From assembly GCF_003918875.1 (NCBI RefSeq), contig NW_025767274.1, positions 558,001 to 622,000 of the forward strand: a stretch of 64,000 nucleotides of DNA, read 5' to 3'. Origin of the DNA: Haliotis rubra. Its lineage: Eukaryota. The translations under genes and the position numbers were made by a program. Of the stretch, positions 1,994 to 60,298 are shown one piece after another; the stretch's first letter is position 1, and each line of letters starts with the position of its first letter. The notes beneath the pieces were generated by a model, which ran no database searches, was not told where the DNA came from, and saw only the letters and a list, made by a program, of their open reading frames with translations.

Positions 1994-4900
1994 GTATAAC
2001 GACAGTATTAGGTAACTGAATTGGTTCCGTTCTTCTCTATGTCTGAAAACATATAGTATAACGACAGTATTAGGTAACTGAATTGGTTCCGTTCTTCTCT
2101 ATGTCTGGAAACATATAGTATAACGATAGTATTAGGTAAGTGAATTGGTTCCGTTCTTCTCTATGTCTGAAAACATATAGTATAACAATAGTATTAGGTA
2201 ACTGAATTGGTTCCATTCTTCTTTATGTCTGAAAACATATAGTATAACGATAGTATTAGGTAAGTGAATTGGTTCCGTTCTTCTCTATGTCTGAAAGCAT
2301 ATAGTATAACGATAGTATTAGGTAAGTGAATTGGTTCCGTTCTTCTCTATGTCTGAAAGCATACAGTATAACGATAGTATTAGGTAACTGTGAACTGGTT
2401 CCGTTCTTTCTATCTCTATGTCTGGAAACATATAGTATGGTTCGATAGTATTAGTATTAGGTAACTGAATTGGTTCCGTTCTTCTCTATGTCGCGTCGGG
2501 AAACATATAGTATAACGACAGTATTAGGTAACTGAATTGGTTCCGTTCTTCTCTATGTCTGAAAACATATAGTATAGCGATAGTATTAGGTAACTGAATT
2601 GGTTCCGTTCTTCTCTATGTCTGGAAACATATAGTATAACGACAGTATTAGGTAACTGAATTGGTTCCGTTCTTCTCTATGTCTGAAAACATATAGTATA
2701 ACGATAGTATTAGGTAACTGAATTGGTTCCGTTCTTCTCTATGTCTGAAAACATATAGTATAACGATGAATAGTATTAGGTAACTGAATTGGTTCCGTTC
2801 TTTCTCTATGTCTGAAAGCATATAGTATAACGATAGTATTAGGTAACTGAATTGGTTCCGTTCTTCTCTATGTCTGAAAGCATATATTATAACGATAGTA
2901 TTAGGTAAGTGAATTGGTTCCGTTCTTCTCTATGTCTGAAAACATATAGTATAACGATAGTATTAGGTAACTGATTTGGTTCCGTACTTCTCTATGTCTG
3001 AAAACATATAGTATAACGACAGTATTAGGTAACTGATTTGGTTCCGTTATTTTCTATGTCTGAAAGCATATAGTATAACCATAGTATTAGGTAAGTGAAT
3101 TGGTTTCGTTCTTCTTTATGTCTGGAAACATACAGTATAACGATAGTATTAGGTAAGTGAACTGGTTCCGTTCTTCTCTATGTCGGGAAACATATAGTAT
3201 AACAATAGTATTAGGTAACTGAATTGGTTCCGTTCTTCTCTATGTCGGGAAACATATAGTATAACAATAGTATTAGGTAAGTGAATTGGTTCCGTTCTTC
3301 TCTATGTCAGGAAACATATAGTATAACGACCGTTCTTCTCTATGTAGTATTAGGTAACTGAATTGGTTCCGTTCTTCTCTATGTCTGGAAACATATAGTA
3401 TAACGATAGTATTAGGTAAGTGAATTGGTTCCGTTCTTCTCTATGTCTGGAAACATATAGTATAACGATAGTATTAGGTAAGTGAATTGGTTCCGTTCTT
3501 CTCTATGTCTGAAAACATATAGTATAACGACAGTATTAGGTAACTGAATTGGTTCCGTTCTTCTCTATGTCTGGAAACATATAGTATAACGATAGTATTA
3601 GGTAAGTGAATTGGTTCCGTTCTTCTCTATGTCTGGAAACATATAGTATAACGATAGTATTAGGTAAGTGAATTGGTTCCGTTCTTCTCTATGTCTGAAA
3701 ACATATAGTATAACGATAGTATTAGGTAACTGAATTGGTTCCGCTGAATTGGTTTTCTTCTCTATGTCTGAAAACATATAGTATAACGATAGTATTAGGT
3801 AAGTGAATTGGTTCCGTTCTTCTTCTCTATGTCTGAAAGCATATAGTATAACGATAGTATTAGGTAACTGAATTGGTTCCGTTCTTCTCTATGTCGGGAA
3901 ACATATAGTATAACGATAGTATTAGGTAAGTGAATTGGTTCCGTTCTTCTCTATGTCATATAGTATAACGATAGTATTAGGTAACTGTGTCTGGAAACAT
4001 ATAGTATAACGATAGTATTAGGTAACTGAATTGGTTCCGTTCTTCTCTATGTCTGGAAACATATAGTATAACGATAGTATTAGGTAACTGAATTGGTTCC
4101 GTTCTTATGTCTATGTCTGAAAACATATAGTATAACGACAGTATTAGGTAACTGATTTGGTTCCTGTTGGTTTCTATGTCTGAAAGCATATAGTATAACG
4201 ATAGTATTAGGTAAGTGAATTGGTTCCGTTCTTCTTCTATGTCTGGAAACATATAGTATAACGATAGTATTAGGTAACTGAATTGGTTCCGCTCTTCTCT
4301 CTATGTCTGGAAACATATAGTATAACGATAGTATTAGGTAAGTGAATTGGTTCCGTTCTTCTCTATGTCTGAAACATATAGTATAACGATAGTATTAGGT
4401 AAGTGAATTGGTTCCGCTTCTTCTCTATGTCTATGTCTGAAACATATAGTATAACGATAGTATTAGGTAAGTGAATTGGTTTTCTTCTTTCTTCTCTATG
4501 TCTGGAAACATATAGTATAACGATAGTATTAGGTAAGTGAATTGGTTCCGTTCTTCTCTATGTCTGGAAACATATAGTATAACGATAGTATTAGGTAAGT
4601 GAATTGGTTCCGTTCTTCTCTATGTCTGAAACATATAGTATAACGATAGTATTAGGTAAGTGAATTGGTTCCGTTCTTCTCTATGTCTGGAAACATATAG
4701 TATAACGATAGTATTAGGTAAGTGAATTGGTTCCGTTCTTCTCTATGTCTGAAAACATATAGTATAACGACAGTATTAGGTAACTGAATTGGTTCCGTTC
4801 TTCTCTATGTCTGAAAACATATAGTATAACGATAGTATTAGGTAAGTGAATTGGTTCCGTTCTTCTTTATGTCTATGTCTGGAAACATATTAGTATGGTT

Positions 4901-7503: not shown

Positions 7504-8139
7504 TATACTATAACACTACATACAGATTCTTATTGAGATCAGGTTGTAGCACTCGTCCTTGGATATAATCAAAGTACTGTATTCAAAGCAATTATCAAAC
7601 AATAGTTACCACTGTGTACGGTTCTGAGGTTACTTCACAGAATTCAATTCCAGGGACCCACATCAAGTGACAGCATATTTTGGGGAAAAGATTATTTACA
7701 GATTTATTTATTGATATTCTCCCTTTGTATGTTTAAAGGTTTGAGAAGAGAAACCCTCATCCTGAGCAATACATTGCCCCATTAGACGAGCTATGAATAA
7801 TGTTCCTTCAATCTTACTACAGATCTATGTTCAAAGAAAGAAGTGGATCAATCTTCATCAGCCTTTGATGTGGTTTTGTGTATGCAGAAAGGTATCTTGG
7901 TGAAAGTATATACTCTGTCTGATCCAACAAAGTCCAGCTTGAGAGAGTATGAGAGATGAATTTGTGATTAAATTTTCTAGAATTTGTTTGCTGATTGATT
8001 GAACGATTGAGAGATTGATTGATTGATTGATTGAGAGATTCAGTGAGTGAGTGAATGAGTAAGTTGTGTTTTGTATTGCACTAAAAATCTTCAGTAATCT
8101 CACCCCATATTGGCTTAATGAGAGAAGATTTGATTATCT

Positions 8140-8330
8140 GGCTGGGCCATACCAAAAGATTTTAAAATATGGTATTTGTTGTTGTCCAGCCTGGTGCCTG
8201 CCATTTAGTGGATGAAACAAGGACTGGCTTGTATAGTGAGTCAGTACACTGTGTCTGAGTGGTGACTTCATCTTTACACTGTGGCACCTGATTTAGGTGT
8301 CCAGCACTATAAATCCAGCAAACACTCATG
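8140..8330 (+). mobile_element. Degenerate V-SINE-like element
   Basis: ggccataccaaaagattttaaaatatggtatttgttgttg...aaggactggct...cagcactataaa resembles the molluscan V-domain SINE body as I recall it. Related copies at 24180-24310 (-) and 27403-27610 (+). Confidence 0.6.
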
Positions 8331-8591
8331 CACATTGCTTTTTGAATTAAATAAACTTGAACACAGTTGAAACCTCATCTTATGTGTCAAGAAAACCCAA
8401 ACTGCAAAAGGTAACAGACCTACACTTATTTTTGGGAAACACAGTACTGACAGACCAACATGTGAGACTGTAATTTAAATCAATAAACACAAAATCCTGA
8501 AACGACTAAGGTATGTAACTCCACTCTCCAACTCATGCCCCCTTTTGGCTACTGTTATTCTTACCTACAGTTTGGCCAATAATTTTCTTAA

Positions 8592-9060
8592 TAATATCAT
8601 AATAGACTATTTGTATAGCGCATATATCCATGTCCGTGACATGCTCAAAGCGCACAAACTGAAGAGTTCCAGAATCACTATATACAAGTAAGTAAAAAAA
8701 AGAGAGATTATTGGGGGTCACTGATGAAAAGCTAATTTGTAGAGGTATGTCTTGAGTGGGCTCTTGAACGAGGAGAGATCAGTACAGAGGCGGAGATGCT
8801 CAGGAAGGTTGTTCCATTCTACAGCAGCAGAGTAGGAGAAGGTTCGGCGTCCATGTACGGTTGATCAGTACTTTGGGGACTTTGAGGAGGTTTTTACTCT
8901 GAGACTGCAGAGATCGAGAAGGCAAATATGGAGTGAGAATATGGGGGAGGTAGACCGGAGCAGAGCCAGAGAGACAATGGAACATAATGCATAGGACTTT
9001 GAAGAGAATTTGTTGTTCAACTGGTAGCCAATGGAGTGATTGGAGGACAGGACTGATATG
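8592..9060 (-). mobile_element. 5'-truncated L2/CR1-group LINE: ORF2 C-terminus plus 3' UTR
   Basis: Minus strand translates HISPVLQSLHWLPVEQQILFKVLCIMFHCLSGSAPVYL...PSRSLQS, then after a frameshift GRRTFSYSAAVEWNNLPEHLR...FKSPLKTYLY...stop. 3' stem-loop GCGCTTTGAGCATG...GCGCTATACAAAT with an ATT-rich tail. Possible TSD ttcttaa (8585/9061). Confidence 0.9.
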
Positions 9061-9079
9061 TTCTTAACCCTTTTGGATG

Positions 9080-9134
9080 AGTGAGTTTTGTTTCTTGCTG
9101 CACTCAGCAATATTCCAGCTACATACTGGCGGTC
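9080..9134 (-). mobile_element. Heavily 5'-truncated SINE family 2 tail with a 15-bp TSD
   Basis: Tail GCTGGAATATTGCTGAGTGCAGC...CTCACT flanked by taacccttttggatg at 9065-9079 and 9135-9149. Confidence 0.85.
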
Positions 9135-9325
9135 TAACCCTTTTGGATGGTATTAAGAATAATTACAATATTTTCTTGTTGCATCGCCTGCTGGACAAAG
9201 GCCAAATACTTTATCCAGGGGACAGGAAACCTTTCTTGTCCCCTTCAACTCAGTATATGTTTGGGCAATGTCTTTTATGAACAATATCCTACTCGATAAA
9301 ATAGACCATGCAAACTGTGTGTCCT

Positions 9326-9832
9326 TACCTCTTACATGAACAATGGACAGGCAATATGGTCAGGCAACCTCATTGTTCTAACCTCTTACATGAACAATGG
9401 ACAGCCAATATGGTCAGGCAACCTCATTGTTCTAACCTCTTACATGAACAATGGACAGGCAATATGGTCAGGCAGCCTCACTGTTCTAACCTCTTACATG
9501 AACAATGGACAGCCAATATGGTCAGGCAACCTCATTGTTCTAACCTCTTACATGAACAATGGACAGGCAATATGGTCAGGCAGCCTCATTGTTCTAACCT
9601 CTTACATGAACAATGGACAGGCAATATGGTCAGGCAGCCTCATTATTCTAACCTCTTACATGAACAATGGACAGGCAATATGGTCAGGCAGCCTCATTGT
9701 TCTAACCTCTTACATGAACAATGGACAGGAAATATGGTCAGGCAGCCTCACTGTTCTAACCTCTTACATGATGAATGTAGAGGTAATATGGTCAGGCAGC
9801 CTCATTGTTCTAACCATGTGTGTGAACAATGG
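9326..9832. repeat. 54-bp minisatellite, about 9.5 copies
   Basis: Unit acctcttacatgaacaatggacaggcaatatggtcaggcagcctcattgttcta. Explains the 18-aa periodic ORFs 9308-9916 and 9336-9884. Confidence 0.95.
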
Positions 9833-43246: not shown

Positions 43247-43614
43247 AGCAACTTCTGAAAATGGCCAACAAGTAGCCACAGTTGATGGCATGACAAGAGA
43301 CCCATGGAGAGGGTCTACAGTTTGTTATAGATACTCTGAATACAAAAGTTTCATTTTGAGCCTGATTCAAAAGACCAATGACCATCCAAACAAATCAATC
43401 TTCTGAGTAAGAAACATTTTATAGAGATAAGACAAATGGAGACGGGGACATCACTTCCAAAACCAATCAAGGGGCAAACTGGTCCAACAGAATTGCTACA
43501 TGGAAAAGAATGATCTCGAATGAAAGATGCCAGACAAGCAGGCCATGAAATATCAGACTCACTTAACCTTGGGTCAAAGTCAGCAATAAATAACATCTAT
43601 TTTGACAATCTTAC

Positions 43615-43789
43615 CTGTCATAGTAAATATTCCGACTAGTACACCTATATTCCGCCCCGCTAACATCACATCCTCGCTGTCGGCTGTGGCACCCGACTGT
43701 TTGGACTTGCCGGCGGCCCATAATCCTACCCCAAGGATAAGCGCATAGAAGAGGATAATAGCGATGAGGCCAGGTATGTGGATCGTCAT
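43615..43789 (-). CDS. SLC5A7: First coding exon of high-affinity choline transporter 1 (SLC5A7/CHT1-like, sodium:solute symporter family); partial gene
   Basis: Translates [58 protein letters not shown], closely matching the CHT1 N-terminus (human [27 protein letters not shown]...GRDIGLLVGGFTMT). 175 nt = 58 codons + 1 nt, ending at ACAG|GTAAGA, a phase-1 donor just before the conserved ATWVGGGY motif. Confidence 0.93.
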
Positions 43790-48269: not shown

Positions 48270-50423
48270 TTTCTTCTGACAAAATACACGAACATCTATA
48301 GTACATGTAAGTTTCCTGAAGATATAATATATACAAAACAAACGTACCAGTGGTGCTTGTCACTGAAAGCCATCTGAAAATTTCTGAAGATATACACATA
48401 CATTAAAGAGAGAAGATTCTCATTTCCTACATAGGTCAAGGTTTTGTAAATAGTGCCTTGTGTGAAACATTTTCTTGATGGGATTTACAAACTGTTCAAT
48501 ACATATAAACCTTATAGTTTGAGACAGGGATGGTGTCTGATTTTGACAGTTAAATTGGTTCCCCAACTTTAGCAAATACTATGGTTCATATTCATGAGGG
48601 ATCATTATGTTAAAAGGGAAGAAAATGATTTTGCCTGACACATATGTAATAAGCTTTTTACAAAACATCTTTAACAGGTTATTTCATACTATTTTTAGAC
48701 AAAAAATTATACCATCCTTCAAACTATATCACTGGTATACTAACATTTATATGAAGCAAACATTGTTACATCAATCTTTTATAAATTTACAGTAGAGATT
48801 CCAGGGATCCCAGAGTACACTTAATTTTCTCTTGCCTTCCCTATATCAGTTGTATCTCATATCACTGACATACAAATTTAAATTATGCAAAGCGTTTTTG
48901 CTGATGGTTATTTTGGTGCTTTCAATTTCATTTCATAGCTATTGATTTCAATTGAATCCAGAGTTCATACAGAATGTTAAATTAAACATTATCTCTGTGT
49001 GAAGGAGTTGAAAAAGTTGGGACCTATGTTGAGCCCTCAACTTTGCCAATTACCTTACATTCAAAGACAAGCCTTAACGAGTAGGTTGACTGTAATTATT
49101 TCTAGAAATCAATGAATTGCCTCATAAATGCTAAGCACTGACACATGAGATCGCCCACAATACCTCAACACGATGGGAATACCAAGGTGGTAGAAACAGA
49201 TCCCAGGGGGTTGAAGAAATTCCAGCCACGCATCACCCGTTACACATGCGTATTGGCAGTACAAGACCGATCAGTGGCTTGCATGACGAAAGAGATTCAT
49301 GGTCATAGGTTTGTAAATACACGCACAACCGTATTAGACCAGAAACCAGTTATTGACTTCATTACTGCGGTATCAAGCCCTAGTCTTAACTGATAACTTA
49401 ATGAGTCCAAATTTAGACCACATGACAGATAGCTGCTGCAATCAAAAAGGCAGGGAAAAAACAGTTTAGAGTTTTTTGTCAAAGGAGACAGAGATTTGGT
49501 TCTTTGGCCAAATCCAATTAAAGAGAGATTTATTATTGAAGATAGTTTATAAAGACCTAAAACCCCAGCAGGCACAAAATGCCATAACAGAATTTAAGGA
49601 ACCAGTTGGCCACCAACAAAGTATACCCCTGACTTGAACAATAATTATAGTTTAATACACAACATAGTAGAGGCAATGTGAGAGTTTAACATAGAAACAA
49701 CAGAAGGTTTGTGCCTTCAAAGTGTGTCCACAAGAACAGACCAGGTTAACCTCTCATTCCTGGCCGCAATCAAATATGTAAATTGATTGGCTAGGGCCAC
49801 AGTGGAGAATTTACCAGTAGTGGAGAACGGTAAATCAATGTCTCCGCAATGATGGATCTGGTTTATTCTGTACTTCAGTTGCCATGAAAACAGAAGAAAT
49901 CAGAAATTGAAGATGAAAAGGAATAAACACAATCCATATTTGTACTAATTAATCAAATGTGGTCAATGTGCTGATTAAGTCACACTTTTTACAAAATAAT
50001 TTATGAAGCCTTCATGGATTTTCTATCATGTTCCAGTTACTAGCTATGGATGAAACTACACGCTTCAGAGGATATTAAGTGTTTTTGATTTCTTTACTCT
50101 CTGAAAAATAGAAGTTCAATTACAATGAAATATAACCCTAATGGCTGGGATGTGTACAATTTACCACCTGGGTACCTGACCCTATCATTCAACCCTACCT
50201 TGTTGCCTGCTGAGGGTCTCAATAGTAGGGTGCAAAATGTCTGATTTTCTGAAGACCCTGTGAAAAGTATTTACATGTATATAATGATGTTATCATGCAT
50301 ACTCTGAATTCTTTTTTACCATATAGACTGTTAAGAGTCCACAGAAATAGAGAAATGGGAACATTTACGACTTGAAGTGTATTGTTACTGTAACTGAACA
50401 ATATGTCACATGACTAACAAGGA

Positions 50424-50732
50424 ACTTCTTTGAGTGGCATTTTAGAAGTTTGGAAGTACAATATAGAACAAACTTTATGGAAAACAACTTCTTTTTATTC
50501 GTGAGTGCGACGTTTCGATACAGATTCTTGTACCGTTGTCAAGCATGAAGTCAGAGTCGTTTCGATACAGATTCTTGTACCGTTGTCAAGCATGAAGTCA
50601 GAGTCGTTTCGATACAGATTCTTGTACCGTTGTCAAGCATGACTTCATGCTTGACAATGGTACAAGAATCTGTATCCAAACGTCGCACTCATGAATAAAA
50701 AGAAGTTGTTATCCATAAAGTTTGTTCTATAT
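50424..50732. mobile_element. Penelope-like fold-back insertion: inverted pseudo-LTR fragments with a 47-bp tandem triplication
   Basis: Exact 13-bp TSD tgactaacaagga (50411/50733). Inverted arms 50459-50552 and 50641-50734. 47-bp units at 50511, 50558 and 50605. Confidence 0.8.
50506..50545 (-). ncRNA. Minimal type I hammerhead ribozyme motif (U3-A8 variant, palindromic helix III)
   Basis: Minus strand reads UGC-UUGACAA-C-GGUACA-AGAAUC-UGUAUC-GAAA-CG-UC^GCA. Helix I UGC/GCA, 6-bp helix II, GAAA core, GUC cleavage triplet. AAUAAA lies just downstream. Confidence 0.7.
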
Positions 50733-51189
50733 TGACTAACAAGGAGGCTGGGTAGTCCCACGGCCAACTCAAGATCCATCAGGACCAAGTGTTCATGTTA
50801 CCCGTCCTAGCCCTACCTCACATATAGTCCACATACTGAAAGATAGCTAAGTAAATTTCTTCGCTAATGACATCAACCCAATATGTAGGAGTCCACATGT
50901 TGGGAAGATATAAGGTTATTTCATCTGGAACTATACAGTCACAAATGAAATCAATATAGTAATGTAAAGATTTGGGCATACATGTACAAGGAAAAGAGTA
51001 GGAGCATTGATCTTTTGATTTTGCAGAATTTCTGCTGAAAGGGACACTAGACACAAACCAATAGTCAGGTCAAGTATGTTTGCTTCAACTCTCTGTGTCT
51101 GCGTCCTAGATCAGTGTAAATGATTGAGATTAACAGTTAATGAATACAAATTTTCTCAGCTTCACACTAGCCCTAATTACACCATCTAC

Positions 51190-60132: not shown

Positions 60133-60298
60133 CTGACTGACTGAGTTTGGTTTTACGCCGCTTTTAGCAATATTCCAGCAATATCACGGCGGGGGACACC
60201 AGAAATGGGCTTCACACATTGTGTCCATGTGGGGATTCGAACCCGGGTCTTCGGCGTGACAAGCCAACGCTTTAACCACTAGGCTACCCCACCGCCCC
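60133..60298 (-). mobile_element. tRNA-derived SINE family 1, intact young copy
   Basis: GGGGCGGTGGGG-TAGCCTAGTGG (A box)...GGTTCGAATCC (B box), an anticodon-like loop TTGTCAC (Asp-like), a (TCAG)n tail and an exact 12-bp TSD ggctcagtgaga at 60121/60299. Confidence 0.97.

What the first reader, a model, noticed from the sequence alone, without database searches (positions are those of the whole stretch)
50411..50745. Penelope-like fold-back cassette: minimal hammerhead ribozyme, tandem half-ribozymes and a built-in antisense arm
Seen: a 309-bp insert with an exact 13-bp TSD. The minus strand (same sense as SLC5A7, about 6.7 kb upstream of the first coding exon) has a full hammerhead motif in which CUGANGA is replaced by UUGACAA, a compensatory C3-G8 to U3-A8 swap. 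Helix III is the loop-less palindrome ACGU and the predicted cut is between 50509 and 50508. Two 47-bp tandem copies 5' of it keep helix I 5' strand, core, helix II and GAAACG, but lack the GUC site. The inverted plus-strand copy has GAAA changed to CAAA and should be inactive. Known: Penelope-like elements carry minimal type I hammerheads that generally need to dimerise through palindromic helix III. Inference: the duplication could let copy 2's core act in cis on copy 1's GUC (helix III ACG/CGU, helix I UGC/GCA). The antisense arm could pair either with adjacent copy 3 (ribozyme free) or with the whole 50459-50552 arm (site masked), giving a potential folding-dependent cleavage switch.
Basis: partly seen in the sequence, partly recalled or inferred. 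Interest (0 to 1): 0.8.

Follow-up and report, generated by a model that had tools for sequence, protein, structure and literature searches.

The report
Truncated Penelope-like insertion with minimal hammerhead
This 309-bp stretch upstream of an abalone choline-transporter gene is a truncated, hairpin-shaped insertion of a Penelope-like jumping element that carries a published kind of minimal hammerhead ribozyme motif. Its repeated half-ribozymes and antisense arm look like insertion scars, not a built-in RNA switch.

Summary
A 309-bp insert (50424-50732) sits between exact 13-bp duplications. It has one complete minimal hammerhead motif on the minus strand (predicted cut 50509|50508), two upstream 47-bp half-copies without the GUC site, and an inverted arm whose copy has G12 changed to C.

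It is one of thousands of copies of a Penelope-like element (PLE) family in this 1.38-Gb genome, which looks like Haliotis rubra. Longer copies carry a reverse transcriptase plus a GIY-(CxC)-YIG ORF that ends about 190 nt before the same hammerhead. The fold-back, the one-sided 37-nt tail and the 10-14-bp duplications are the published PLE insertion signature.

The ribozyme matches the published PLE min-HHR:
- U3-A8 core
- an extra nucleotide between A9 and G10.1
- a G10.1-C11.1 pair
- no helix III loop

Helix II covaries across subfamilies of this genome.

The proposed cis-cleavage switch is not supported. The tandem junction occurs only at this locus, and other insertions carry different micro-tandems. 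The whole RNA is predicted to fold into a 95-bp hairpin, and the proposed cis fold is strongly disfavoured.

Verdict: a new member of a known kind, of low interest.

The parts
50411..50423 (.). Left target-site duplication, TGACTAACAAGGA
   Evidence: Exact 13-nt direct repeat of 50733-50745. Sampled family copies have their own 10-14-bp duplications.
50424..50460 (-). One-sided 37-nt 3' tail of the PLE (sense on the minus strand). It is absent from the inverted arm.
   Evidence: The same tail ends 29 of 32 sampled family copies, with one C-to-A difference here. It matches the published 30-40-bp PLE tail (PMC8557442, PMC11167929).
50461..50505 (-). 3' non-coding region of the parent PLE, lying between the hammerhead and the tail (direct arm)
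   Evidence: The first 123 bases of the insert (50424-50546), which include this stretch, are 98% identical to dozens of family copies.
50506..50546 (-). Complete minimal type I hammerhead motif (copy 1). Helix I is UGC/GCA, the core is U3-UGAC-A8-A9, and an extra C sits at 50535. Helix II is GGUAC/GUAUC with loop AAGAAUCU, followed by G12AAA, the C15.2-G16.2 palindrome and U16.1-C17. The predicted cut is 50509|50508.
   Evidence: Sequence read directly. Descriptor counts are 8470 against 295 for the control. Helix II covaries. It matches the published min-HHR features (PMC4209133).
50547..50557 (-). 11-nt filler (ACUCUGACUUC) between unit 2 and copy 1. It is not parent sequence.
   Evidence: The parent reads ...CAUGUUCCAUU before AUGC. 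The junction is unique in the genome.
50558..50593 (-). Half-hammerhead unit 2 (AUGC, core, helix II, GAAACG). It has no GUC site.
50594..50604 (-). Second copy of the 11-nt filler
50605..50640 (-). Half-hammerhead unit 3. It has no GUC site and abuts the fold-back centre.
50641..50646 (+). Fold-back centre. The plus strand reads GACTTC, which equals the 3' part of the filler, so the inverted arm was copied from a unit that already carried the filler.
   Evidence: Inverted repeat I2 (43 nt) reaches into the filler. Also read directly from the sequence.
50647..50732 (+). Inverted 5'-truncated arm (sense on the plus strand), without a tail. It carries a hammerhead copy at 50647-50687 that is disabled by G12-to-C at 50677 and has two CpG-to-TpG changes.
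   Evidence: All three differences from the family majority are private to this arm.
50733..50745 (.). Right target-site duplication
43613..43789 (-). Context: first coding exon of a high-affinity choline transporter (SLC5A7/CHT1) orthologue, 6.6 kb downstream of the insert on the same strand
   Evidence: phmmer E 2.6e-14 to residues 1-59 of PDB 9bfi/8j74.

Best explanation
The insert is a small, non-coding, 5'-truncated fold-back insertion of an abundant Penelope-like retroelement (PLE) family of this abalone genome.

**How it formed (inferred).** The PLE endonuclease cut the target with a 13-bp stagger. Reverse transcription started on element RNA at two alternative sites: one at the end of the 37-nt tail (direct arm) and one 37 nt further in (inverted arm). 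Both cDNAs broke off just after copying the hammerhead. Template switches then added an 11-nt filler and two extra partial hammerhead units, and joined the arms head to head.

**The hammerhead.** The motif comes from the parent's 3' terminal region. It is a genuine member of the published metazoan PLE minimal hammerhead class (U3-A8 variant), which has no helix III of its own and is thought to need a second copy to cleave.

**This locus.** The extra units and the antisense arm are insertion scars. Any transcript that spans the insert is predicted to fold into a long hairpin, not an active ribozyme.

**Shown:** the anatomy, family membership, the parent ORF, helix II covariation and the uniqueness of the junction.
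**Inferred:** the order of events during insertion.
**Untested:** cleavage and transcription.
For: - **Family size.** There are at least 2148 first-look candidates and dozens of copies 98% identical over the first 123 bases of the insert (50424-50546).
- **Parent element.** Longer copies (L044-L046) have an ORF with an RVT_1 hit (E 4.9e-8). [quoted passage not shown] The stop codon lies about 190 nt before the same hammerhead.
- **Homologues.** They are Haliotis and other invertebrate proteins with RVT_1 + HTH_animal, and GIY-YIG in some.
- **Fold-back copies.** Copies of 213-1461 bp each have the tail at one end only and their own 10-14-bp duplication, as published for PLEs (PMC8557442, PMC11167929).
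- **Hammerhead class.** All published min-HHR features are present (PMC4209133).
- **Helix II covariation.** In 47 distinct sequences taken in genomic order, helix II is 91% paired and all 5 pairs show changes on both sides. The covariation score is 0.415 against 0.225 in shuffles (0 of 500 reach it) and 0.03-0.22 in slid registers.
- **Unique junction.** The junction of this locus occurs nowhere else.
- **Variable micro-tandems.** There are 83 same-strand micro-tandem pairs at about 25 loci, all with different junctions, and 111 tiny fold-backs.
- **Age.** Only 5 derived changes occur in about 275 nt relative to the family majority. Identical tandem units are therefore compatible with formation at insertion.
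Against:
- No empty orthologous or paralogous site was found, because the flank is single-copy.
- Pfam's GIY-YIG model does not hit the parent's C-terminal domain. The endonuclease call rests on the motif, the Atlas neighbours and the Pfam marks on homologues.
- Nearest-neighbour energies ignore hammerhead tertiary contacts, so the low predicted occupancy of the cis fold does not prove inactivity.
Confidence: 0.85

Rival explanations
1. The cassette is a functional, folding-dependent self-cleavage switch: the core of unit 2 acts in cis on the GUC of copy 1, and the antisense arm either frees or masks the site. It might act on the choline-transporter pre-mRNA.
For: The topology is possible. Unit 2's ACG can pair with copy 1's CGU, and its UGC with GCA. 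This gives a type I hammerhead whose helix III is closed by copy 1 (checked). Published min-HHRs cleave, weakly, only as dimers or trimers (PMC4209133). The insert has the same sense as the downstream gene.
Against: - The junction is unique to this locus.
- Other insertions carry unrelated micro-tandems.
- The cis fold scores -4.9 against an MFE of -20.1 kcal/mol, an ensemble fraction of about 5e-6. In the MFE the core GAC pairs with the GUC site.
- The full RNA folds into a 95-bp hairpin that masks the site.
- G12-to-C in the antisense arm is a private mutation.
- HHR cleavage was not needed for PLE insertion in vitro, and no reads ended at the HHR site in Anolis (PMC11167929).
- Transcription of this locus is unknown.
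Confidence: 0.05
2. The 47-bp triplication arose after insertion, by replication slippage or unequal exchange, or it is an assembly artefact. On this reading it was not made by template switching during insertion.
For: The three units are identical over their shared length, whereas the two long arms differ at 4 of 95 positions. Short-period arrays of the same motif that look like DNA-level satellites exist elsewhere.
Against: - The inverted arm includes 6-7 nt of the filler. At least one filler-plus-unit junction therefore existed when the arm was made.
- With about 1.8% derived change overall, zero changes in the extra units is unremarkable (P about 0.27, computed from the counts).
- Many independent insertions show micro-tandems in both arms, for example L002 with three units in each arm. 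That points to formation during insertion.
- Three 47-bp units are far shorter than a read, which makes an assembly artefact unlikely. This could not be checked.
Confidence: 0.07
3. It is a cut-and-paste MITE or foldback DNA transposon with terminal inverted repeats, and the hammerhead-like motif is coincidental.
For: It has long, near-perfect inverted arms flanked by a direct duplication.
Against: - The ends are asymmetric, with a 37-nt tail on one side only.
- Duplication length varies from 10 to 14 bp between copies.
- Arm length and internal content vary from copy to copy (213-1461 bp).
- Both arms are the 3' end of an element that encodes an RT.
- The motif is 29-fold enriched over its control and shows covariation.
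Confidence: 0.02

Closest known systems
Minimal hammerhead ribozymes (min-HHR) of metazoan Penelope-like elements, including the U3-A8 variant of Schistosoma Cercyon (Cervera & de la Pena 2014, PMC4209133)
   Same: - The core boxes match, with the U3-A8 swap.
- There is no helix III or loop 3, and positions 15.2-16.2 are palindromic.
- An unpaired nucleotide sits between A9 and G10.1, and the G10.1-C11.1 pair is present.
- Helix I is short.
- Thousands of heterogeneous copies fall into consensus families with compensatory changes.
- Copies often occur as pairs on opposite strands, 100-700 bp apart.
- The motif lies in the terminal repeat of an RT plus GIY-YIG element.
   Different: - Helix II is 5 bp here, against 6-8 bp in the published families.
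- Helix I is only 3 bp.
- The host is a gastropod (abalone) family that I did not find described in the papers searched.
- Cleavage was not assayed here.
PLE insertion architecture: pLTRs, an inverted 5'-truncated copy, a one-sided 30-40-bp tail and a variable TSD (Craig et al. 2021, PMC8557442; Frangieh et al. 2024, PMC11167929)
   Same: The insert has an inverted 5'-truncated copy next to a direct copy, a 37-nt tail at one end only and a 13-bp duplication. Its two outer ends correspond to two alternative reverse-transcription start sites 37 nt apart.
   Different: This copy is extremely truncated (about 120 nt per arm) and has no ORF. It carries extra 47-bp micro-tandems instead of the kilobase-scale partial tandems that form pLTRs.
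Metazoan non-LTR retrozymes (Cervera & de la Pena 2020, PMC7229834; Li et al. 2026 preprint, 10.64898/2026.07.22.740005)
   Same: These are non-coding tandem repeats that carry type I hammerheads, are related to PLE terminal regions and have TSDs longer than 4 bp.
   Different: Retrozyme units are about 170-400 nt. Each has a complete, cleavable canonical hammerhead and gives rise to circular RNA. Here the units are 47 nt and two of the three lack the cleavage site.
Rfam Hammerhead_1 (RF00163) and other Rfam hammerhead families
   Same: The conserved catalytic boxes and the type I strand order are shared.
   Different: Rfam gave no match, even at E<=10. The motif has no helix III hairpin of its own.

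Membership tests
Metazoan PLE minimal hammerhead (min-HHR; PMC4209133) | Catalytic boxes (C/U)3-U-G-A-N-(G/A)8-A9 and G12-A-A-A15.1, followed by N-N-U16.1-H17 | tested here: met
   UUGACAA at 50542-50536 and GAAACGUC at 50516-50509. The U3-A8 form is the published covariant. Genome count is 8470 against 295 for the control.
Metazoan PLE minimal hammerhead (min-HHR; PMC4209133) | No helix III or loop 3; positions 15.2-16.2 are palindromic so that two copies can form helix III | tested here: met
   The sequence reads A-C-G-U (50513-50510), with C15.2 and G16.2 adjacent.
Metazoan PLE minimal hammerhead (min-HHR; PMC4209133) | An extra unpaired nucleotide between A9 and G10.1, and a conserved G10.1-C11.1 pair | tested here: met
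   C at 50535. The extra position is C in 39 of 48 distinct motifs. The G-C pair occurs in 36 of 47.
Metazoan PLE minimal hammerhead (min-HHR; PMC4209133) | Helix II supported by compensatory changes among consensus families within one genome | tested here: met
   All 5 pairs show changes on both sides and 91% of cells are paired. The covariation score is 0.415 against 0.225 in shuffles (0 of 500 reach it). Slid registers give at most 0.22.
Metazoan PLE minimal hammerhead (min-HHR; PMC4209133) | Short helix I formed by the flanks | tested here: inconclusive
   Only 3 bp here (UGC/GCA). Across the sample 76% of cells are paired, and U-A changes to A-U at the third pair in 4 sequences.
Metazoan PLE minimal hammerhead (min-HHR; PMC4209133) | Located in the terminal repeat region of an element that encodes RT plus GIY-YIG | tested here: met
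   In L044-L046 the ORF ends about 190 nt upstream of the motif. RVT_1 E 4.9e-8. The pLTR (tandem) context itself was not examined.
Metazoan PLE minimal hammerhead (min-HHR; PMC4209133) | Self-cleavage, weak and dependent on dimers | not testable with these tools
   This needs in vitro transcription.
Penelope-like element (EN+; Penelope/Poseidon-type architecture) | A single ORF with RT followed by a C-terminal GIY-YIG endonuclease that has two Cys between GIY and YIG (CCHH) | tested here: met
   - RVT_1 hit.
- The block [22 protein letters not shown]..H is present.
- Some homologues carry PF00078 + PF01541.
- Pfam's GIY-YIG model itself does not hit this copy.
- The sampled copies are frameshifted or 5'-truncated.
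Penelope-like element insertion signature (PMC8557442, PMC11167929) | 5' truncation, an adjacent inverted 5'-truncated copy, a 30-40-bp tail at one end only, and a TSD of variable length | tested here: met
   Arms of about 86 nt, a 37-nt tail at 50424-50460 only, and a 13-bp TSD here. TSDs are 10-14 bp in 14 of 16 sampled copies.
Rfam hammerhead families (RF00163, RF00008, RF02275-7) | A match to the covariance model | tested here: not met
   No hammerhead hit at E<=10. Only hairpin-type chance matches to miRNA models were returned.
Non-LTR retrozyme | Tandem units of about 170-400 nt, each with a complete cleavable hammerhead, expressed as circular RNA | tested here: not met
   The units are 47 nt. 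Only one of the three minus-strand units has the GUC site. Expression was not tested.
MITE / foldback DNA transposon | Symmetric terminal inverted repeats and a TSD of fixed length | tested here: not met
   The tail is one-sided, TSDs range from 10 to 14 bp, and both arms are the 3' end of a retroelement.

The most novel reading that the evidence does not exclude
In this genome, the fold-back turnarounds and micro-tandem restarts of these PLE insertions, this locus included, pile up within a few nucleotides 5' of the hammerhead core.

Counts per equal-sized bin of facing-motif spacing are:

| Position of turnaround | Loci |
|---|---|
| Inside the ribozyme | 25 |
| At its 5' edge | 111 |
| Next bin out | 26 |
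| Bin after that | 18 |

If this is not just microhomology or a sampling effect, the hammerhead domain marks a preferred RNA 5' end or a stop/switch point for the PLE reverse transcriptase. That would give the enigmatic PLE hammerhead a mechanistic role in insertion. A weaker variant is that a tandem half-ribozyme can supply helix III in cis and make a min-HHR active without a second molecule.
Probability: 0.12. Interest if true: 0.55.

Novelty: new member of a known kind. Interest (0 to 1): 0.22.

Why it matters
On its own it matters little: it is one dead copy among thousands, and both the ribozyme type and the insertion architecture are published.

It does three useful things:
- It documents that abalone genomes hold large, covarying families of PLE minimal hammerheads, both U3-A8 and C3-G8 types.
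- It shows that hairpin-plus-tandem "designs" around these motifs are variable insertion scars that should not be over-read.
- It offers a natural series of template-switch junctions that could inform how PLE reverse transcriptases build their tandem and inverted structures.

A long perfect hairpin 6.6 kb upstream of a neuronal transporter gene could be a source of small RNAs if it is transcribed. That is speculation.

Tried and rejected
- **Rfam scans** of the region at E<=10 and of the whole window at gathering thresholds found no hammerhead, only hairpin chance hits to miRNA models.
- **C2277 as a full-length parent.** I took two copies 5.6 kb apart there (L029/L030) for a full-length element. 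They are a segmental duplication with no ORF.
- **Endonuclease domain.** Pfam at E<=10 and a PDB sequence search of the C-terminal domain gave no GIY-YIG hit. Membership rests on the motif, the Atlas neighbours and the homologues.
- **Choline-transporter exon.** Pfam on exon 1 alone gave nothing. The PDB search settled it. No second exon was recognised among the minus-strand ORFs.
- **Empty site.** A search for a paralogous empty site failed because the flank is single-copy.
- **Age argument.** I considered that identical tandem units against 4% arm divergence meant a later expansion. I dropped this after counting only 5 derived changes in about 275 nt.
Full report
**1. The observation**

- TGACTAACAAGGA occurs at 50411-50423 and again at 50733-50745. 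It brackets a 309-bp insert (50424-50732).
- There are three 47-bp tandem units at 50511-50651. Two are identical and the third runs into the fold-back centre.
- Two 95-nt inverted arms (50459-50553 and 50640-50734) are 96% complementary.
- On the minus strand the sequence AUGC-UUGACAA-C-GGUAC-AAGAAUCU-GUAUC-GAAA-CG-UC|GCA lies at 50546-50506. The predicted hammerhead cut is therefore between 50509 and 50508, as stated.
- The two upstream units read GAAACG-AC and so have no GUC site.
- The plus-strand copy in the inverted arm (50647-50687) reads CAAACGTC, which changes the general base G12 to C (50677).

Four refinements follow from the sequence.

1. Helix II is 5 bp, with an extra C (50535) between A9 and G10.1. 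If that C were paired with the G of GAAA, G12 would be lost.
2. Helix I is 3 bp.
3. Each 47-bp unit is 36 nt of parent sequence plus an 11-nt filler that the parent element does not contain.
4. The left end carries 37 nt (50424-50460) that the inverted arm lacks.

Rfam has no hammerhead hit here even at E<=10. That is expected, because the motif has no helix III hairpin.

**2. What it belongs to**

The window is G000:C2384:558001-622000 of a 1.38-Gb assembly in 2855 contigs. The closest named proteins are from Haliotis rubra and other abalones, which agrees with earlier notes of this scan.

The insert is a member of a large repeat family:
- at least 2148 first-look candidates;
- dozens of copies 98% identical to the first 123 bases of the insert (50424-50546), after which they continue into a longer parent.

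Walking inwards reached copies in which an ORF lies on the hammerhead strand and stops about 190 nt upstream of the motif.
- The ORF has an RVT_1 hit (E 4.9e-8).
- It shows recognisable RT motifs.
- Its C-terminal block reads [28 protein letters not shown]. This is GIY, then two cysteines, then YIG, which Craig et al. give as the mark of PLE endonucleases (PMC8557442).

Pfam's own GIY-YIG model does not reach this copy. However, the nearest Atlas clusters and several homologues carry RVT_1 + HTH_animal + GIY-YIG. The sampled copies are frameshifted or 5'-truncated. I did not look for, or build, an intact one.

**3. The insertion signature**

Published PLE insertions are strongly 5'-truncated. 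They often have an inverted 5'-truncated copy at the 5' side, and they carry a 30-40-bp tail at one end only. The tail corresponds to the stretch between two alternative reverse-transcription start sites. Their TSDs vary in length (PMC8557442; PMC11167929).

This insert shows all of these features. So do the other small copies I printed: every one begins with ATATAGAAC... on the inverted side and ends with the tail ...CAAAGAAGT on the direct side. In 14 of 16 sampled fold-back copies (213-1461 bp) I found a private 10-14-bp duplication.

A cut-and-paste MITE is excluded by three things: the one-sided tail, the variable duplication length, and the fact that both arms are the 3' end of an RT-encoding element.

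**4. The hammerhead**

Cervera and de la Pena (PMC4209133) defined the metazoan PLE min-HHR by these features:
- the catalytic boxes;
- no helix III or loop 3, with a palindromic 15.2-16.2;
- the G10.1-C11.1 pair;
- a long helix II and a short helix I.

They also described a U3-A8 core variant and pairs of motifs on opposite strands 100-700 bp apart. All of this fits here.

Descriptor counts in the whole genome:

| Descriptor | Matches | Reversed control |
|---|---|---|
| U3-A8 | 8470 | 295 |
| C3-G8 | 2107 | 125 |

To test helix II without choosing sequences by eye, I fetched the U3-A8 matches as they were listed in genomic order along contig C1, down to C1:10,597,864, in 60 fetched regions.
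- Among 48 distinct 34-mers, the five helix II pairs are 88.7% paired. Column shuffles give 78% (0 of 2000 reach the observed value) and slid registers give 18-54%.
- On an ungapped alignment of 51 sequences (A1), the pair counter gives 91% paired for helix II, with changes on both sides at all five pairs. Examples are A-U 25 against G-C 19, and U-A 24 against C-G 16.
- The covariation score is 0.415 against 0.225 in shuffles (0 of 500 reach it) and at most 0.22 in slid registers.

The independent events are few, about five or six subfamilies, so this is support and not proof. Self-cleavage itself was not testable. The published min-HHRs cleave only weakly, and only as dimers or trimers.

**5. 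The proposed switch**

Four lines of evidence argue against a designed cis-cleaving, folding-dependent cassette.

*The junction is unique.* The sequence that defines the tandem (GAAACGACTCTGACTTCATGC) occurs twice in the genome, and both occurrences are at this locus.

*The architecture varies between insertions.*
- 83 same-strand pairs of cores spaced 25-55 nt apart occur at about 25 loci, each with a different junction.
- 111 loci have cores facing each other within 30 nt.
- Individual copies show three units in both arms (L002), a junction exactly at GUC|AUGC (L004), and partial units only in the antisense arm (L003, L020).

*The differences between the arms are ordinary decay.* Relative to the majority of 24 family copies:
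- the inverted arm has two CpG-to-TpG changes and the G12-to-C change, all private to it;
- the direct arm has one change, plus one in the tail;
- the extra units have none.

With about 1.8% change overall, zero changes in the extra units is unremarkable. The inverted arm also includes the last 6-7 nt of the filler, so a filler-plus-unit junction already existed when that arm was synthesised.

*The folding predictions are unfavourable.*
- The full minus-strand RNA folds into a 95-bp hairpin at -163.7 kcal/mol (z = -19), which buries the cleavage site.
- The copies 1+2 RNA has an MFE of -20.1 kcal/mol, no better than shuffles, and in it the core GAC pairs with the GUC site.
- The proposed cis hammerhead (helices I, II and III) scores -4.9 kcal/mol. 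Enforcing it leaves about 5e-6 of the ensemble.

Energy models ignore tertiary contacts, so this weakens the idea without excluding it.

**6. Context**

Window 43789-43613 (minus strand) encodes residues 1-59 of a high-affinity choline transporter (E 2.6e-14 to PDB 9bfi/8j74).

Whether the site lies in a 5' intron or upstream of the promoter is unknown, and so is whether it is transcribed. The flank is single-copy, so no empty paralogous site could be shown.

**7. Most likely mechanism**

*Inferred from the anatomy and from Frangieh et al. 2024.* Both target strands are cut 13 bp apart. Reverse transcription of element RNA starts at the tail end on one side and 37 nt further in on the other. 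Both cDNAs stop just beyond the hammerhead. Template switches then add the filler and two partial units and join the arms.

*Shown here:* the anatomy, the family, the parent ORF, the covariation and the uniqueness of the junction.

**8. An unexplained pattern**

The junctions are not placed at random. The table gives turnaround counts per equal-sized bin.

| Position of turnaround | Loci |
|---|---|
| Inside the ribozyme | 25 |
| Within a summed 30 nt upstream of the two facing cores | 111 |
| Next bin out | 26 |
| Bin after that | 18 |

Tandem units also nearly always restart 0-7 nt 5' of the core, while the upstream unit ends at variable places. The anchors differ in CpG content, and some matches in the outer bins are composites, so the ratios are rough.

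The cause could be either:
- microhomology at the quasi-palindromes TTGNCAA, AAGCTT and GCAT/ATGC; or
- a preferred RNA end or reverse-transcriptase stop at the edge of the ribozyme.

This is the only part of the work that points beyond what is published.

**9. Verdict**

- The identification as a Penelope-like fold-back insertion with a minimal hammerhead is supported.
- The switch model is not supported.
- The locus is a new member of a known kind (a PLE min-HHR family in abalone) and is of low interest in itself.

The earlier notes of this scan on the same genome (s1-329446, s1-329449, s1-320423) reached the same family-level reading. I re-derived each point here and did not rely on them.

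Noticed in passing
G000:C2692:9012-11547; C857:128277-129055; C813:173988-174391; C147:526452-526648; C2589:988781-988917; L063 (C1:1976726-1977146); C91:2061405-2061851: There are satellite-like arrays of min-hammerhead units with very short periods (31-60 nt). One has at least 40 units. Some units keep the GUC site and others have a decayed helix II. They look like DNA-level amplification of the micro-tandems that PLE insertions create.
   Followed up: partly
Genome-wide; in the window, 50641-50646 and the unit starts at 50546, 50593 and 50640: Fold-back turnarounds and tandem restarts cluster within a few nucleotides 5' of the hammerhead core. Counts are 111 loci there, against 25 inside the ribozyme and 26 and 18 in the next bins out. 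The cause is unknown: it could be an RNA end, an RT stop or palindromic microhomology.
   Followed up: partly
Alignment A1, columns 20-27 (window 50529-50522): Loop 2 of the U3-A8 min-hammerheads is conserved across subfamilies whose helix II differs (NAGNAYCU, with five positions at 90% or more). This could reflect a contact or protein-binding site, or only shared descent.
   Followed up: no
window 43613-43789 (-): This is the first coding exon of a high-affinity choline transporter (SLC5A7/CHT1) orthologue, aligned from residue 1 (E 2.6e-14 to PDB 9bfi/8j74). No second exon was recognised among the minus-strand ORFs of the window.
   Followed up: partly
window 60229-60287 (-): Rfam reports a partial tRNA match (33.4 bits, model positions 7-64), but ARAGORN finds no tRNA. 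It is probably the head of a tRNA-derived SINE, of the kind earlier notes report as abundant in this genome.
   Followed up: partly
Proteins P0023, P0120 and P0016: PLE-type RT fragments are deposited as proteins of bacterial MAGs (Candidatus Omnitrophica, Alphaproteobacteria), which probably reflects animal DNA in those bins. A Haliotis asinina 'ligand-gated ion channel 4-like' gene model also includes a PLE HTH_animal piece.
   Followed up: no
L031 (G000:C2277:464000-473999), 3452-4036 and 9036-9622: A 5.6-kb segmental duplication carries a fold-back PLE copy together with its flank. A 30-nt-period tandem array lies between the two copies, at 7902-8860.
   Followed up: no
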